Assembly: GCF_006345805.1 (NCBI RefSeq)
Contig: NW_021824253.1
Location: forward strand, 1-19,384
DNA: 19,384 nucleotides
Direction of reading: 5' to 3'
Origin: Octopus sinensis
Taxonomy: Eukaryota
Below the pieces are notes generated by a model. That model had not been told where the DNA came from. It saw only the letters and a program-made list of their open reading frames with translations, and made no database searches. A program made the position numbers and the translations under genes. Shown piece by piece: positions 122-17,885 of the stretch. Positions within the stretch are counted from its first letter, which is position 1. Every line of letters starts with the position of its first letter.

Positions 122-582
122 TAAAGCGATGAGCTGGCAGAACCGTTAGCACGCCGGGCAAAATGTTTAGCGGTATTTCGTCTGTCTTTATGTAAGGCGG
201 CGAGCTGGCAGAAATGTTAGCAAGCCGGGAGAAATGCTTAGCAGTATTTCGTCTGCCGCTACGTTCTGAGTTCAAATTCCGCCGAGGTTGACTTAGCCTT
301 TCATCCTTTCGGAGTCAATTAAATAAGTACCACTTACGCACTGGAGTCGATATAATAGACTTAATCCGTTTGCCTGTCCTCTCTGTGTTTAGCCCTTTGT
401 GGGTAGTAAAGAAATAGGTATTTCGTTTGTCTTTACGTTCTGAGTTCAAATTCCGCCGAAGTCGACTTTACCTTTCATCTTTTTCGGGGTCGATTAAATA
501 AGTACCAGCAGAGCACCAGGACCGATGTAGTTGACTTATCCCCACTCCCAAAATTGCAGCCTTGTTCCTAAATTTGAAATCA
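122..582 (+). mobile_element. Old SINE-A copy (tRNA-derived; host parts 122-192 and 418-582) interrupted by a younger SINE-A insertion
   Basis: A-box-like GAGCTGGCAGAA, B-box GAGTTCAAATTCC, central GCCTTTCATCCTTTCGGGGTCGATAAA-type domain, old-type tail CCCAAAATTGCAGCCTTGTTCCTAAATTTGAAATC. Duplicated 20-mer at 173-192 and 418-437. Confidence 0.85.
193..417 (+). mobile_element. Young SINE-A, full length, nested in an older copy
   Basis: Starts TAAGGCGGCGAGCTGGCAG and ends GGGTAGTAAAGAAATAG. Flanked by GTATTTCGTCTGTCTTTATG / GTATTTCGTTTGTCTTTACG (18/20 identical; TSD). Confidence 0.85.
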
Positions 583-596
583 GTAATAAGGGGGAA

Positions 597-735
597 TATG
601 GCGGCAGGCTGAGAAAATAGTCAGCATGAGAGCAAAAATGCTTAGCGGCCTATCGACCATCATTATGTTCTGAGTTCAAATTCCCCCGAGGTCCAGTTTG
701 CTTTTATCCCTTTAGGGATGAATGAATAGGTAGCA
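597..735 (+). mobile_element. Degenerate SINE-A (head and part of core)
   Basis: GGCGGCAGGCTGAGAAAATAGTCAGC...ATGCTTAGCGG...GTTCTGAGTTCAAATTCCCCCGAGGTC aligns by eye with the other SINE-A copies. Confidence 0.7.
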
Positions 736-8282: not shown

Positions 8283-9000
8283 AAGGCGGCGAAGCTGGCA
8301 GAACCGTTAGGACGCCGGGCGAAATGCTTAGCAGTATTTCGTCTGCCGTTACGTTCTGATTTCAAATTCCACCGAGGTCGACTTTGCCTTTCATCCTTTC
8401 GGGGTCGATAAATTAAGTACCAGTTACGCACTGGGGTCGATGTAATCGACTTAATACCTATGTCTGTCCTTGTTTGTCCTCTCTGTGTTTAGCCCCTTGT
8501 GGGTAATAAAGAAATAGGTATTTCGTTTGCCGTTACGTTCTGAGTTCATATTCCGCCGAGGCCGACTTTGCCGTCCATCCTTTCGGGGTGGATAAATTAA
8601 GTACTAGTTACACACTGAGGCCAATGTAATCGACTTAATCCGTCTGTCTGTCCTTGTTTGTCTCCTCTGTGTTTAGCCCCTTGTGGGTAGTAAAGAAACA
8701 GGTATTTCGTCTGCGTTCTGAGTTCAAATTCCGCCGAGGTCGACTTTACCTTCCATCCTTTCGGGGTCGATAAATTAAGTACTAGTTACACACTGAGGCC
8801 AATGTAATCGACTTAATCCGTCTGTCTGTCCTTGTTTGTCTCCTCTGTGTTTATCCCCTTGTGGGTAGTAAAGAAATAGGTATTTCGTCTGCGTTCTGAG
8901 TTCAAATTCCGCCGAGGTCGACTTTTCCTTTCATCCTTTCGGGGTGGATAAATTAAGTACTAGTTACACACTGGGGCCACTGTAATCGACTTAATCCGTC
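8282..9000 (+). mobile_element. Tandem array of young SINE-A: full unit 8282-8517, headless units 8518-8701 and 8702-8879, and truncated unit 8880-9000
   Basis: Units of 184 and 178 bp; each junction reads AAAGAAA(T/C)AG|GTATTTCGT. Confidence 0.92.
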
Positions 9001-9090
9001 TAGGATCGACGTCTTCAACTTAAAAATACGAGTCGGTGATCCAACATGGCTGCAGTCCAATAATTGAAAGAAGTAAACGATAAAAGATAT
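9001..9090 (+). mobile_element. Decayed SINE-B-type 3' terminus
   Basis: GGTGATCCAACATGGCTGCAGTCCAATAATTGAAAGAAGTAAACGATAAAAGATA resembles 7759-7810 (GGTGCTCCAGCATGGCCGCAGTCAAATGACTGAAGCAAGTAAAAGAG). Confidence 0.65.
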
Positions 9091-9730: not shown

Positions 9731-9872
9731 ACACACAGAGACATATAGGACTAAATGCTTTTCTCTGCTGAAAATGATGACGAAGACCATCGAAGCCAAT
9801 ATTGAATACTCAACAAAATACACGACCGCAAAAAGTACGTTCTTTATTTGATACATGATACAAAATAGATTC

Positions 9873-9934
9873 TGCTGCTCTGCATTGATAAGGGGCAAAT
9901 ACCCCGAAACTAGTCTGTGGGTGCCCGACCAGCA
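9873..9934 (+). ncRNA. Minimal type I hammerhead ribozyme motif, U3-A8 variant (predicted cleavage after C9915)
   Basis: Core UUGAUAA 9885-9891; helix II GGGG/CCCC 9892-9895/9902-9905; GAAA 9906-9909; palindromic helix III ACUAGU 9909-9914; GUC triplet 9913-9915; helix I UCUGCA/UGUGGG 9879-9884/9916-9921 plus UGCUG/CAGCA 9873-9877/9930-9934. Confidence 0.8.
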
Positions 9935-10039
9935 AGGGGAAGCTGCTGACCTCCCCTGTTCGAAGGATATAATGGACACAGATTTGGGTGTTACATAGCT
10001 AGCTAGAGGCGATGGCCTCTTGGAGCTAATCAACGGCAG

Positions 10040-10177
10040 CATTCGTCCTATTTGGGTGGAATGGAACAACGTGAAATAAAGTGTCTCGCTTAAGGAAACA
10101 ACGCGCTGTCAGGAATCGAACTCGTGACCTAACGATCATGAGCCGAATACCCTAACCACTAACCCACGCGCCTTCAC
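10040..10177 (-). mobile_element. SINE-D: tRNA-derived head plus CORE-like segment
   Basis: Reverse complement GTGAAGGCGCGTGGGTTAGTGGTTAGGGTATTCGGCTCATGATCGTTAGGTCACGAGTTCGATTCCTG has A and B boxes, followed by GTTGTTTCCTTAAGCGAGACACTTTA. No cloverleaf acceptor stem, so not a tRNA gene. Confidence 0.78.
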
Positions 10178-10479
10178 CGGAAATTAATATATGATCCTTT
10201 AACTGTTTTGGAGGATACCGTCTTAGAATATCGTGTTGCTCTGTCCCTATAACGTTGATTGTTTTGCTATAAATTTGATCCCGGAAGTACAACCAAACAC
10301 ACAAGGAGACAAAAATGTATAGCCTTGTCCTCTTACGTAATAAACAGATTAACACTGCACTCCACAGCAGATTAACTAAGGATACTAACTTAGAAAATAG
10401 AAAAGAATATCACCTATGCAAAGAATAAGAGCTCGAGCATTCTTCGTTATTTTTGTTTTCAATTTGACTATTGATGTTG

Positions 10480-10918
10480 GTTTTAAACATTGACCAAAAA
10501 AGCCAGTAATTTCGAGGGTGAAGATTAGTCGATTAGACCGACTACAGGGTTCAACTGGTACTTATTTCATCGACCCGGAAAGAATAAAAAGGAAAGTCGA
10601 CGTCGGTGGAATTTGAACACAGAATGCAAAGACAAAACACCGCTAAGCATTTGGCCCAGCGTGACAATGATTCTGCCATTTCGCCGCATTCACTGATCTT
10701 AGAATTGGTTTCAAATTTTGGGAAAAAGCCAGCAATTATGGGAGTGCGGGTTAGTCGATTTCATGAACTCCAGTTTTTAACTGGTACTTGTTTTACTGAA
10801 TCCAAAAGGATGAAAAGCAAAGCCGACTCCGGCGTAGTTTGAACTCAGAATGCAAAGATGATACATCGCTAAGTATTTAGCCCAGCACACTAGCCATTAT
10901 ACCAGTTAGTCGCCTTTA
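10480..10918 (-). mobile_element. Two head-to-tail old SINE-A copies (10480-10690 and 10705-10918)
   Basis: Each contains the reverse complement of the core (CTGGTACTT...ATCGACCC...AAAGG...AAAGTCGAC..GGAATTTGAAC.CAGAA) and of the head (GCTAAGCATTT.GCCCAGC). Confidence 0.75.
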
Positions 10919-10928
10919 TTGAACATAA

Positions 10929-11334
10929 CATTTTGACACAAGGTTAGCAGTTTCGAGGTTGGGAGTAAGCCGATTACATCAAATTCAGTGTATCGCTGGT
11001 ACTTTGTTAATCGACCCCAAAAGAGTGAAAGGGAAAGTTGATGTCAGTGGAATTTGAACACAAAATCTAAAGACGGACAAAATACCTATTTCTTTACTAC
11101 CCACAAGGGGCTAAACACAGAGGAGACAAACAAGGACAGATAGACAGATTAAGTCGTTTATATCGACCCCAGTGCGTAACTGGTAGTTAATTTATCGATC
11201 CCGAAAGGATGAAAGGCAAAGTCGACCTCGGCAGAATTTGAACTCAGAACGTAACGGCAGACGAAATAACACGGACAAAATACCGCAAAGCATTTTGCCT
11301 GGTGTACTAATGATTCTGCCAACTCGCCGCCTTA
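10929..11334 (-). mobile_element. Old SINE-A containing a 5'-truncated young SINE-A (11086-11270) flanked by a 13-bp TSD
   Basis: Exact direct repeat ACGGACAAAATAC at 11073-11085 and 11271-11283 surrounds the young unit, which ends at the family tail (+ strand CTATTTCTTTACTACCCACAAGGGG). Confidence 0.85.
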
Positions 11335-12062
11335 TTTTGAGCTTTTATATTAACGCACACGCCTTTTATATCCAATATTAGCTTATTCTGATGCCACTTC
11401 CTTATAATATAATGGTACCAAGTTCTACCCTTGATTAAGTACGATTGGCTCACAGAATAAAAAGTTGTTGATGTCTGGAAATTTAGTCAAATACACAACT
11501 GCAACAAATATACACCCTTAAACTCATACTTGATAATAAACAAATTAACAGAACACATCACCAATAAATAGACACGTGTTAGCTTCATAGAATATAAGAG
11601 AGATCTTTACAATGTCATTGCAAGGAAAGACTGGTGAAAATATCTGCCCCAGCTACAAACAAATAAACAGCTTTTCGGAAGAATAAATAAATATGAGGCT
11701 TTCAAGAGGATCAGTTCGACGAAATAAATTGCTTTGAATAGAAGCAGACTGAATAAAATGAGATCTGTTCAACAGCGGTGAGAGTATCGAACGGAACACG
11801 ACTGAATTGGATCCTAATAATGGCGGGCACTCGGTCAATGTTCTTCCGACTATGAAATGGAGAAAAACCATGATGCGTAAAATTGTGAGGAAAGAAAAAA
11901 AAAAAAAAGAATGCTGAATTATCCTTACATTGCGAACTAGAAAAATAGGGATCCCAAATGAAAATGAAATAAAGGACCTTCATAGCAACGAAAATCCGAA
12001 TAAATAATTATAAAATAAATAAAATGAAAAAAAATGGAAATACATTTACCCTTTCCACCATG

Positions 12063-12148
12063 ATATATATATATATATATTAATAAATATATTGGCTGCT
12101 CTTTCTAGTGAGTCGAATGTCCTATTATGGCCATTCCTTATATTGTTG

Positions 12149-12180
<32 letters not shown>

Positions 12181-12195
12181 ATATATATATATATA

Positions 12196-12244
<49 letters not shown>

Positions 12245-12300
12245 TATATATATAATATATTATATATATATATATATATGAGATATATATATAAATATAA
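12063..12300. repeat. (TA)n microsatellite runs
   Basis: Seen directly in the sequence. Confidence 0.9.
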
Positions 12301-12490
12301 AAAAAAGTTAATATAAAAATAAAATAACGATTTATCAAGTGATCAGCATGGAAAAATTTACCTTCAAAGGTAATAATTTTAAATTATAAATTAGGGTATC
12401 TACGAGGTACCACTATGCTGAAAATAGCAGCCATGATCTGACTCTAAAACCACATTTTTATATTTGCATTGGGATCCTTCCATCGGAAAC

Positions 12491-12553
12491 AGGTGATTGT
12501 CGTATGCTAATGACGGGTCAAGACCCAGAAACTGCAGTCCGTGCGTATCACTT
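12491..12553 (+). ncRNA. Minimal type I hammerhead ribozyme motif with a G5A core change (probably inactive; nominal site after C12539)
   Basis: Core CUAAUGA 12507-12513; helix II GGGUC/GACCC 12515-12519/12522-12526 with a C.A closing mismatch; GAAA 12528-12531; palindrome ACUGCAGU 12531-12538; GUC 12537-12539; helix I CGUAUG/CGUGCG 12501-12506/12540-12545 plus AGGUGAU/AUCACUU 12491-12497/12547-12553. Confidence 0.78.
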
Positions 12554-12761
12554 AGGTTGACGAGTGAAGGATGACCTTCCTTCGCAAATACCGATAAGGC
12601 ACAGAAAGTGTGCCTATAGCCAGCTGGAGGAGATGTTCTCCTGGGGCTACAAGCTACAGTAACACCTACCCTTAGTGGTTAGCCACATTGAAATGGCAAA
12701 TATACACCACATTGTCGTGCAGTTACTGCTTATACCTCATTCAGAGATTTATTATTGCTTG

Positions 12762-17674: not shown

Positions 17675-17885
17675 TTTCTTATGCCCACAAGTGGCTAAAC
17701 ACAGAGGGGACAAACGGATCACGTCGATTACATAAACCCCAGTGCGTAATTGGTACTTATTTAATCGACCCCGAAAGGATGACAGGTAAAGTCGACCTTG
17801 GCTGAATTTGAACTCAGAGCGTAGAGGCAGAAGAAATACTGCTAAGTATTTCGCCCGATTCAAGCGATTCGGCCAGTTCACTCGC
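17675..17885 (-). mobile_element. Young-type SINE-A (moderately diverged) whose tail abuts (TA)n
   Basis: TTTCTTATGCCCACAAGTGGCTAAACACAGAGGGGACAAAC...CCCCAGTGCGTAATTGGTACTT...GAATTTGAACTCAGAGCG is the reverse complement of unit 8282-8517. Confidence 0.85.

What the first reader, a model, noticed from the sequence alone, without database searches (positions are those of the whole stretch)
9935..12650. Two diverged copies of an unannotated structured RNA module downstream of the hammerheads, with covariation
Seen: 9995-10028 and 12616-12649 match at 27/34 nt and start 80 and 77 nt after the respective cleavage sites. Six of the seven differences form three compensatory pairs and the seventh makes a wobble. 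Inner stem AGAGGC/GCCTCT versus GGAGGA/TTCTCC (A-U to G-C, C-G to A-U, G-C to G-U) around an invariant GAUG loop; outer stem TAGCT/AGCTA versus TAGCC/GGCTA (U-A to C-G) around an invariant AGCU/UGG internal loop. Two upstream hairpins are positionally conserved too: AGGGGA/TCCCCT 9935-9957 versus GAAGGA/TCCTTC 12566-12583, both with UGACC in the loop; and GACAC/GTGTT 9975-9992 versus AGGCACA/TGTGCCT 12597-12615. Inference: a ~160-nt hammerhead-plus-three-hairpin RNA under structural selection, i.e. a retrozyme-like or PLE pseudo-LTR family, in which the conserved loops may be RT-recognition or circularisation signals. I do not recognise the downstream fold.
Basis: partly seen in the sequence, partly recalled or inferred. 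Interest (0 to 1): 0.88.

Follow-up and report, generated by a model that had tools for sequence, protein, structure and literature searches.

The report
Conserved RNA domain of octopus retrozymes
The two look-alike stretches are decayed copies of two abundant octopus mobile-repeat families that carry a hammerhead ribozyme. The hairpins after the ribozyme are a real RNA fold kept by compensating mutations across many families, in an element class that is already known.

Summary
The coordinates, the 27/34 match, the 80- and 77-nt offsets from the cleavage sites and the three compensated pairs plus one wobble are all as described.

Both stretches are dead, truncated copies of short non-coding repeats. 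Copy A (9870-10053) covers positions 10-191 of a ~233-nt family. Copy B (12460-12759) covers positions 51-350 of a ~350-nt family that also forms head-to-tail arrays.

Both families carry minimal type-I hammerheads with a 2-bp helix III and a palindromic loop. Their insertions show Penelope-like scars: 5' truncation, an inverted truncated partner, and (TA)n targets. They are octopus members of the known animal non-LTR retrozymes.

The downstream hairpins belong to a larger conserved 3' domain: H1, H2, bipartite H3, H4a, H4b and a long-range helix. H3 with exact loops occurs 4,681 times in the genome. At least nine abundant stem variants keep pairing through G-C, G·U and A-U series, so the structural selection is real.

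Not settled:
- Function is untested. An RT/RNP handle or a circRNA scaffold is inferred.
- Rfam has no match.
- No autonomous Penelope copy examined carries the module.
- Expression could not be shown.

This scan has already noted many such retrozymes elsewhere in this genome.

The parts
9870..10053 (+). Copy A: fragment (family positions 10-191 of ~233) of an interspersed non-coding hammerhead repeat
   Evidence: blastn against 30 genomic copies of ~92% identity; other copies extend 9 nt upstream and ~40 nt downstream
9878..9922 (+). Hammerhead of copy A. Helix I 9878-9884 with 9916-9922. Core UUGAUAA 9885-9891 (U3/A8). Helix II 9892-9895 with 9902-9905. GAAA 9906-9909. 2-bp helix III with palindrome ACUAGU 9909-9914. 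Cleavage after C9915.
   Evidence: read; helices I and II covary between families; all family A copies have UUGAUAA
9935..9957 (+). H1 of copy A (AGGGGA/UCCCCU, loop ends UGACC)
   Evidence: GGG/CCC core invariant across families, one flanking pair covaries
9975..9992 (+). H2 of copy A (decayed; family form GACACA/UGUGUC)
9996..10028 (+). H3 of copy A. Outer stem 9996-10000 with 10024-10028. AGCU 10001-10004. Inner stem 10005-10010 with 10015-10020. GAUG 10011-14. UGG 10021-23.
   Evidence: model R1, 57.7 bits
12460..12759 (+). Copy B: 5'-truncated copy (positions 51-350) of a ~350-nt hammerhead repeat; ends in CTTG and then (TA)n
   Evidence: tandem junctions of the family
12492..12551 (+). 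Hammerhead of copy B. Extended helix I 12492-12506 with 12540-12551. Core CUAAUGA 12507-12513 (G5 to A, family form CUGAUGA, so probably inactive here). Helix II 12515-12518 with 12523-12526. Palindrome ACUGCAGU 12531-12538. Cleavage after C12539.
12566..12583 (+). H1 of copy B (register shifted by decay; family form AGGGA/UCCCU)
12597..12615 (+). H2 of copy B (GGCACA/UGUGCC)
12617..12649 (+). H3 of copy B (UAGCC/GGCUA outer stem, GGAGGA/UUCUCC inner stem with one G·U)
   Evidence: model R1, 58.3 bits
12656..12729 (+). Rest of the 3' domain of copy B. Long-range helix 12656-12663 with 12722-12729 encloses H4a (~12665-12678) and H4b (12682-12697).
   Evidence: the helix reads ACAGUAAC/GUUACUGU in B and ACAGUAGC/GCUACUGU in sister families

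Best explanation
The hairpins are part of the conserved, structured 3' domain of a large superfamily of octopus non-autonomous hammerhead retroelements. These are animal non-LTR retrozymes, spread by Penelope-like reverse transcriptase/endonuclease.

Shown here: the RNA helices are maintained by compensatory substitution among the source elements of many families, while three loop sequences (AGCU, GAUG, UGG) are identical in the families found without requiring them.

Inferred: the domain lies downstream of the ribozyme, and 5'-truncated copies keep it while losing the ribozyme end. I therefore think it most likely acts in cis as the handle by which the retrotransposition machinery selects and primes this RNA. 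It would also give the processed ~230-350-nt RNA a compact fold.

The two window copies are truncated and dead.
For: - Copy number and boundaries.
- Penelope-style scars: inverted 5'-truncated partners, 5' truncation with retained 3' ends, (TA)n at ends, and ~350-nt head-to-tail arrays. These match the features listed in PMC8557442.
- Hammerhead helices I and II covary.
- H3 abundance: 4,681 exact-loop copies against 0 for the reversed control.
- H3 stem variants: A AGAGGC/GCCUCU, J GGAGAC/AUCUCC, D' GGAGAC/UUCUCC, K GGAGAA/UUCUCC, B GGAGGA/UUCUCC, E GGAGGA/UCCUCC, H GGAGGA/UCUUCC, G GGAAGA/UCUUCC, F GGAAAA/UUUUCC. They give G-C, G·U and A-U series at inner pairs 4 and 5, A-U versus G-C at pair 1, and U-A versus C-G in the outer stem.
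- Formal count on 29 distinct held copies: 90.5% paired against 83.3% shuffled (0 of 500 shuffles reach it) and 38-61% when the partner is slid.
- H2 pair 2 runs G-C, G·U, A-U, and pairs 3 and 4 also switch.
- H4b reads GCCAU/AUGGC or GCCAC/GUGGC.
- The long-range helix reads A-U or G-C, with G·U intermediates.
- Full units fold better than shuffles, z = -3.0 and -3.5.
- Word depth in genome runs peaks over H2-H3.
Against: - No function was tested.
- The autonomous Penelope copies I could read have the same U3/A8 hammerhead type, but only a ~75-nt AT-rich tail follows it. None of 30 GIY-YIG loci has H3 within 1.5 kb downstream of the endonuclease domain. A shared 3' end with an autonomous partner, expected for an RT handle, was therefore not found.
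- The innermost H3 pair is C·A in the commonest family, J.
- The pattern searches fixed the loops, so loop conservation is shown only for families A-E, which were found independently.
- Family copies are related, so counts of cells are not counts of events.
Confidence: 0.55

Rival explanations
1. The domain is mainly a structural scaffold of the retrozyme RNA. It keeps the processed monomer compact and nuclease-resistant, brings the cleaved ends together for ligation into a circle, and may control when the dimer-dependent hammerhead folds. Recognition by the RT is not its role.
For: Animal retrozyme circRNAs are reported to adopt stable, highly self-paired structures (PMC7229834). In family A the first ~24 nt pair with the ~25 nt after the cleavage site, enclosing the ribozyme. 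A long-range helix closes the 3' domain. B-like units form the tandem arrays needed for double cleavage. The autonomous Penelope copies lack the module.
Against: Invariant loop sequences beside covarying stems suggest specific recognition rather than mere compactness. Family A was seen only as solitary or inverted copies, not head-to-tail, so circles are not obviously made from it. No RNA evidence was obtained.
Confidence: 0.28
2. The hairpins have no function of their own. They are inherited sequence, and the apparent covariation reflects a few chance double changes that hitch-hiked when particular source copies amplified.
For: All copies share descent, and abundant stem types are amplified lineages, so independent events are few. 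Within family A most G-to-A changes at inner pair 4 are uncompensated. Changes of the fifth outer-stem base to a purine are never compensated.
Against: Compensated or wobble states recur in five different helices and in families with different hammerheads. Abundant families almost never carry a broken pair in inner pairs 1-5, whereas singleton copies often do. By my count, 72 of 100 randomly listed copies are fully paired at pairs 1-5. Shuffled and slid controls fall well below the observed values.
Confidence: 0.1
3. The conserved stretch is a DNA-level signal, such as an internal promoter or an endonuclease site, rather than an RNA structure.
For: Solitary copies need a promoter. UAGCC-AGCUGG loosely resembles a pol III A box and GUUCGAAGG in family A a B box (my reading).
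Against: The box order is wrong and family B lacks the B-box-like word. A DNA signal does not predict compensatory changes or G·U intermediates in five helices.
Confidence: 0.04

Closest known systems
Animal non-LTR retrozymes (Cervera and de la Pena 2020, PMC7229834; Li et al. 2026 preprint, 10.64898/2026.07.22.740005)
   Same: Non-coding 170-400-nt units with one type-I hammerhead each, low GC, tandem arrays in some families, and a link to Penelope-like elements.
   Different: These papers give only minimum-free-energy folds; 'covariation' does not occur in PMC7229834. Here a multi-hairpin domain is shared by many families and supported by compensatory changes. Many copies are solitary or inverted rather than tandem. 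The hammerheads are the minimal Penelope type, often with a U3/A8 core. Expression and circles are untested here.
Hammerheads in pseudo-LTRs / 3' regions of Penelope-like elements (Cervera and de la Pena 2014, cited from PMC8557442; Craig et al. 2021, PMC8557442)
   Same: Minimal type-I hammerhead with a very short helix III and a palindromic loop, near the element's 3' end. Insertions show 5' truncation, inverted partners, tails and a (TA)n bias.
   Different: The autonomous Penelope copies read in this genome have the ribozyme followed by a short AT-rich tail, without H1-H3. The module is a feature of the non-autonomous families.
3' stem-loops shared by stringent LINEs and their SINE partners (own knowledge, e.g. 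eel UnaL2/UnaSINE1)
   Same: A conserved 3' RNA structure retained in 5'-truncated copies. It is the model for the RT-handle reading.
   Different: No autonomous partner sharing the module was found, and the enzyme class differs (Penelope-like RT with GIY-YIG endonuclease).

Membership tests
Type-I hammerhead ribozyme, minimal Penelope type | Conserved core CUGANGA ... GAAA and an H at the cleavage site | tested here: met
   Family B majority form is CUGAUGA...GAAA...GUC. Families A, J and the autonomous Penelope copies have UUGAUAA, i.e. both partners of the C3-G8 pair changed. Window copy B has G5 to A.
Type-I hammerhead ribozyme, minimal Penelope type | Helices I and II supported by covariation; helix III of 1-2 bp with a palindromic loop | tested here: met
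   One search shows 5 helix I pairs and 1 helix II pair with changes on both sides. Palindromes seen: ACUAGU, ACUGCAGU, ACCCGGGU, ACCAUGGU, ACCGGU, ACCGCGGU.
Type-I hammerhead ribozyme, minimal Penelope type | Self-cleavage | not testable with these tools
   Runs were available only as contigs, which cannot show RNA ends. Rfam hammerhead models do not reach E<10 on these minimal forms.
Animal non-LTR retrozyme | Non-coding unit of ~170-400 nt with one hammerhead | tested here: met
   Units of ~233 nt (A) and ~350 nt (B).
Animal non-LTR retrozyme | Head-to-tail tandem arrays | tested here: met
   Met for B-like families: CTTG-linked junctions and ~352-nt periodic arrays. Not seen for family A, where the C17 'array' is a segmental repeat of an inverted pair. 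Both window copies are solitary.
Animal non-LTR retrozyme | Expressed as linear and circular RNA | tested here: inconclusive
   20 runs from 4 coded organisms hold family B words, but none is on record as RNA. The go-back joints also occur in a DNA-like run.
Penelope-type insertion | 5' truncation, adjacent inverted 5'-truncated copy, tail, microsatellite targets | tested here: met
   For family A the (TA)n enrichment is modest: 6/35 against 5.8% background.
Pseudo-LTR of an autonomous Penelope-like element | Module lies 3' of an RT/GIY-YIG ORF | tested here: not met
   Model R1 with filters off on 30 GIY-YIG loci gives only an unrelated antisense A copy (L077) and a family C copy upstream of the ORF (L087). 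Only 1.5 kb downstream was held.
Any Rfam family | Match at the gathering score or at E<10 | tested here: not met
   only microsatellite-driven miRNA noise.

The most novel reading that the evidence does not exclude
The conserved H1-H3/H4 domain, with its invariant AGCU, GAUG and UGG loops, is a dedicated protein-binding RNA handle for the Penelope-like reverse transcriptase, the sister lineage of telomerase RT. Retrozymes would then be template RNAs recognised through a structured domain, much as telomerase RNA is. This would give a tractable model for how TERT-like enzymes came to bind structured RNAs.
Probability: 0.12. Interest if true: 0.75.

Novelty: new member of a known kind. Interest (0 to 1): 0.42.

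Why it matters
How animal retrozymes are chosen and copied by Penelope-like enzymes is not known. The function of the hammerhead in these elements is also unclear (PMC8557442).

A domain that is abundant, shared by many families and supported by compensatory change gives a defined target for experiments. These include stem-disrupting and stem-restoring mutants, loop mutants, RT-binding assays and chemical probing. It could also seed an RNA family model for annotating cephalopod genomes, in which these repeats number in the thousands.

Tried and rejected
- **Rfam.** Searches at gathering score and at E<10 on the window and on cleaner family copies returned nothing relevant.
- **More loci.** Families F, G, H, J and K were therefore read only as 80-nt pattern prints and tallied by eye, not aligned by a tool.
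- **Purine at the fifth outer-stem base.** This search gave 34 hits, all uncompensated singles, so no such family exists.
- **Expression and circles.** All runs were contigs with RNA status only guessed. The go-back joints also stand in a DNA-like run, so they show tandem DNA, not circles.
- **Autonomous partner.** None was found among 30 GIY-YIG loci. No consistent proximity appeared between listed module places and the 149 listed GIY-YIG places (my comparison).
- **Metagenome scan.** It returned one contig whose inner strands are not complementary, so it is a chance match.
- **Strand-asymmetry argument.** I considered arguing that G·U but not C·A occurs in abundant families. I dropped it because family J has C·A at the loop-closing pair.
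- **tRNA or pol III promoter origin.** The resemblance is weak and the box order is wrong.

Full report
**What is in the window.** Window 9995-10028 and 12616-12649 differ at 7 of 34 positions. Six differences are three compensated pairs and the seventh makes a G·U. The AGCU, GAUG and UGG unpaired stretches are identical.

Each stretch follows a hammerhead. Copy A has core UUGAUAA at 9885-9891, helix II GGGG/CCCC, GAAA, a 2-bp helix III inside the palindrome ACUAGU, and cleavage after C9915. Copy B has core CUAAUGA at 12507-12513, the palindrome ACUGCAGU, and cleavage after C12539. The offsets to the module are 80 and 77 nt.

Rfam finds nothing at the gathering score or at E<10. This holds for the window and for cleaner family copies.

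**They are two repeat families, not two isolated copies.** Each stretch retrieves dozens of ~92%-identical places in the window's own 2.7-Gb genome. The first look found 1,907 and 3,139 candidates.

Comparing copies with each other defines the units:
- Family A is ~233 nt. The window copy covers positions 10-191, and another repeat abuts its 3' break.
- Family B is ~350 nt. The window copy covers positions 51-350 and ends in CTTG followed by (TA)n.

The family B majority form has the canonical CUGAUGA core, so the window copy's G5-to-A change is decay. All family A copies have UUGAUAA, in which both partners of the C3-G8 core pair are changed. RNAalifold on 8+8 copies recovers helices I and II with changes on both sides, as well as the bipartite hairpin.

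**How they were inserted.** Many copies have a 5'-truncated copy in inverted orientation directly at their 5' end. Truncation points vary, but the 3' ends are retained.

B-like units also occur head to tail with a CTTG linker. Four of the 12 printed 3' flanks (30 copies have a complete 3' end) show this. Go-back joints appear in contigs of two runs, one of them DNA-like. Arrays with a ~352-nt period occur in inverted blocks.

Many 3' ends abut (TA)n. These are the insertion features listed for Penelope-like elements in PMC8557442. The unit size and ribozyme type are those of animal non-LTR retrozymes (PMC7229834; 10.64898/2026.07.22.740005). Earlier notes of this scan call the genome an octopus and report many such retrozyme families in it.

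**Is the covariation real?** Held loci contained three further diverged families, C, D and E. I then read more families through exact-pattern searches of the genome, which print the matched letters.

H3 with exact loops occurs 4,681 times, against 0 for the reversed control. Abundant inner-stem types are:
- A: AGAGGC/GCCUCU
- J: GGAGAC/AUCUCC
- D': GGAGAC/UUCUCC
- K: GGAGAA/UUCUCC
- B: GGAGGA/UUCUCC
- E: GGAGGA/UCCUCC
- H: GGAGGA/UCUUCC
- G: GGAAGA/UCUUCC
- F: GGAAAA/UUUUCC

Numbering inner pairs from the outside in:
- Pair 1 is A-U or G-C.
- Pairs 4 and 5 each run G-C, G·U, A-U.
- Pair 6 is C-G or A-U, but C·A or C·U in J and D', so it is dispensable.
- The fifth outer pair is U-A or C-G.

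In the unfiltered listing I counted 72 of 100 copies with pairs 1-5 all standard. The breaks were mostly one-off variants. G/F-type stems occur with at least five different hammerhead types.

On 29 distinct held copies, the tool count gave 90.5% paired cells. Shuffling gave 83.3% (0 of 500 shuffles reached the observed value), and sliding the partner gave 38-61%. Four pairs changed on both sides. Because copies are related, I treat families, not cells, as events.

**The domain is larger than three hairpins.**
- H2 pair 2 is G-C (B), G·U (H-type families) or A-U (A and others). Pairs 3 and 4 also switch, as in GAGACA/UGUCUU and GAUGCA/UGCAUC.
- H1 keeps a GGG/CCC core, with one covarying flanking pair (GGGAG/CUCCC against GGGAA/UUCCC).
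- H4a follows H3 and reads GUCC/GGAC, CCAC/GUGG or ACCC/GGGU.
- H4b reads GCCAU/AUGGC or GCCAC/GUGGC.
- An 8-bp long-range helix encloses H4a and H4b. It reads ACAGUAAC/GUUACUGU in B and ACAGUAGC/GCUACUGU in sister families, with occasional G·U intermediates (4,415 hits, control 36).
- In family A the first ~24 nt pair with the ~25 nt after the cleavage site, so an extended helix I encloses the ribozyme.

Whole units fold better than shuffles, with z = -3.0 and -3.5. Word depth in four runs peaks over H2-H3. That measure is coarse.

**What it does.** This part is inferred. Two facts point to specific recognition of the RNA: the domain is retained in 5'-truncated copies, and its loops are invariant beside covarying stems. 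I consider a cis-acting handle for the Penelope-type RT/endonuclease the most likely role. A structural scaffold for the processed or circular monomer is a close rival, and the two are not exclusive.

The main evidence against the handle reading comes from the autonomous elements. The Penelope copies I could read carry the same U3/A8 hammerhead type (UUGAUAA, helix II GGUUC/GAACC, palindrome ACAUGU) 570-1,170 nt after the ORF stop. Only a ~75-nt AT-rich tail running into (TA)n follows it, without the module.

A covariance model of H3 found no copy downstream of the endonuclease domain in 30 GIY-YIG loci. The window itself has only the two copies.

**Limits.**
- My patterns fixed the loops, so loop conservation is shown only for families A-E.
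- No run on record as RNA holds the family, and contigs cannot show cleavage or circles.
- Other cephalopod genomes could not be searched. Runs of four coded organisms hold family B words.
- A metagenome scan gave one chance match.

**Verdict.** The element class is known. The covariation-supported domain is a new and useful detail, not a new kind of system. This scan has already noted many such retrozymes, and two similar modules, elsewhere in this genome.

Noticed in passing
L068:2362-2396, also L067, L077, L080-L090 (about 570-1170 nt after the ORF stop): Autonomous Penelope-like copies (RT/GIY-YIG ORFs up to 883 aa) carry a hammerhead with the U3/A8 core UUGAUAA, helix II GGUUC/GAACC and palindrome ACAUGU. 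A ~75-nt AT-rich tail running into (TA)n follows it.
   Followed up: partly
L065:2158 and 2270; also L080, L086-L089: A second repeated motif lies in the Penelope 3' UTR. It has UUGAUGA, then ~35 nt, then CGAAAC-GAUUG-GUC. This is hammerhead-like, but with a long and poorly paired helix II.
   Followed up: no
window 10056-10177: A different ~120-nt repeat abuts the 3' break of copy A. It is 70-87% identical to copies in L057, L020, L033 and others, which suggests it interrupted the element.
   Followed up: partly
window 226-720, 8316-9069, 10514-11268, 17709-17857: Arrays of a ~180-nt SINE-like repeat occur in both orientations. They form long inverted repeats (307 nt at 83%) around the region that holds copy A.
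   Followed up: no
L091 (G000:C17:24821400-24823100): A ~513-nt unit is repeated three times in tandem. The unit is an inverted truncated A copy, a full A copy, an AT-rich microsatellite and a 40-nt flank. This is a segmental duplication, not a head-to-tail retrozyme array.
   Followed up: yes
window 10001-10004 and 12622-12625: The conserved 5' internal loop of H3 is the palindrome AGCU. Together with the palindromic helix III loop, this gives two self-complementary sites that could pair two RNA molecules.
   Followed up: no
window 12705-12712 versus 12759: B-like families have two alternative 3' ends. One comes shortly after H4b, often followed directly by (TA)n. The other lies ~45 nt further on. 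In arrays only the terminal unit uses the short end.
   Followed up: partly
3' flanks of family A copies in L003-L030: Four of the 12 family A 3' flanks printed (35 copies have a complete 3' end) continue with a shared ~30-nt extension, CCAGTACCGCTGCCGTAGTCTC... This resembles the 30-40-bp tail described for Penelope insertions.
   Followed up: no
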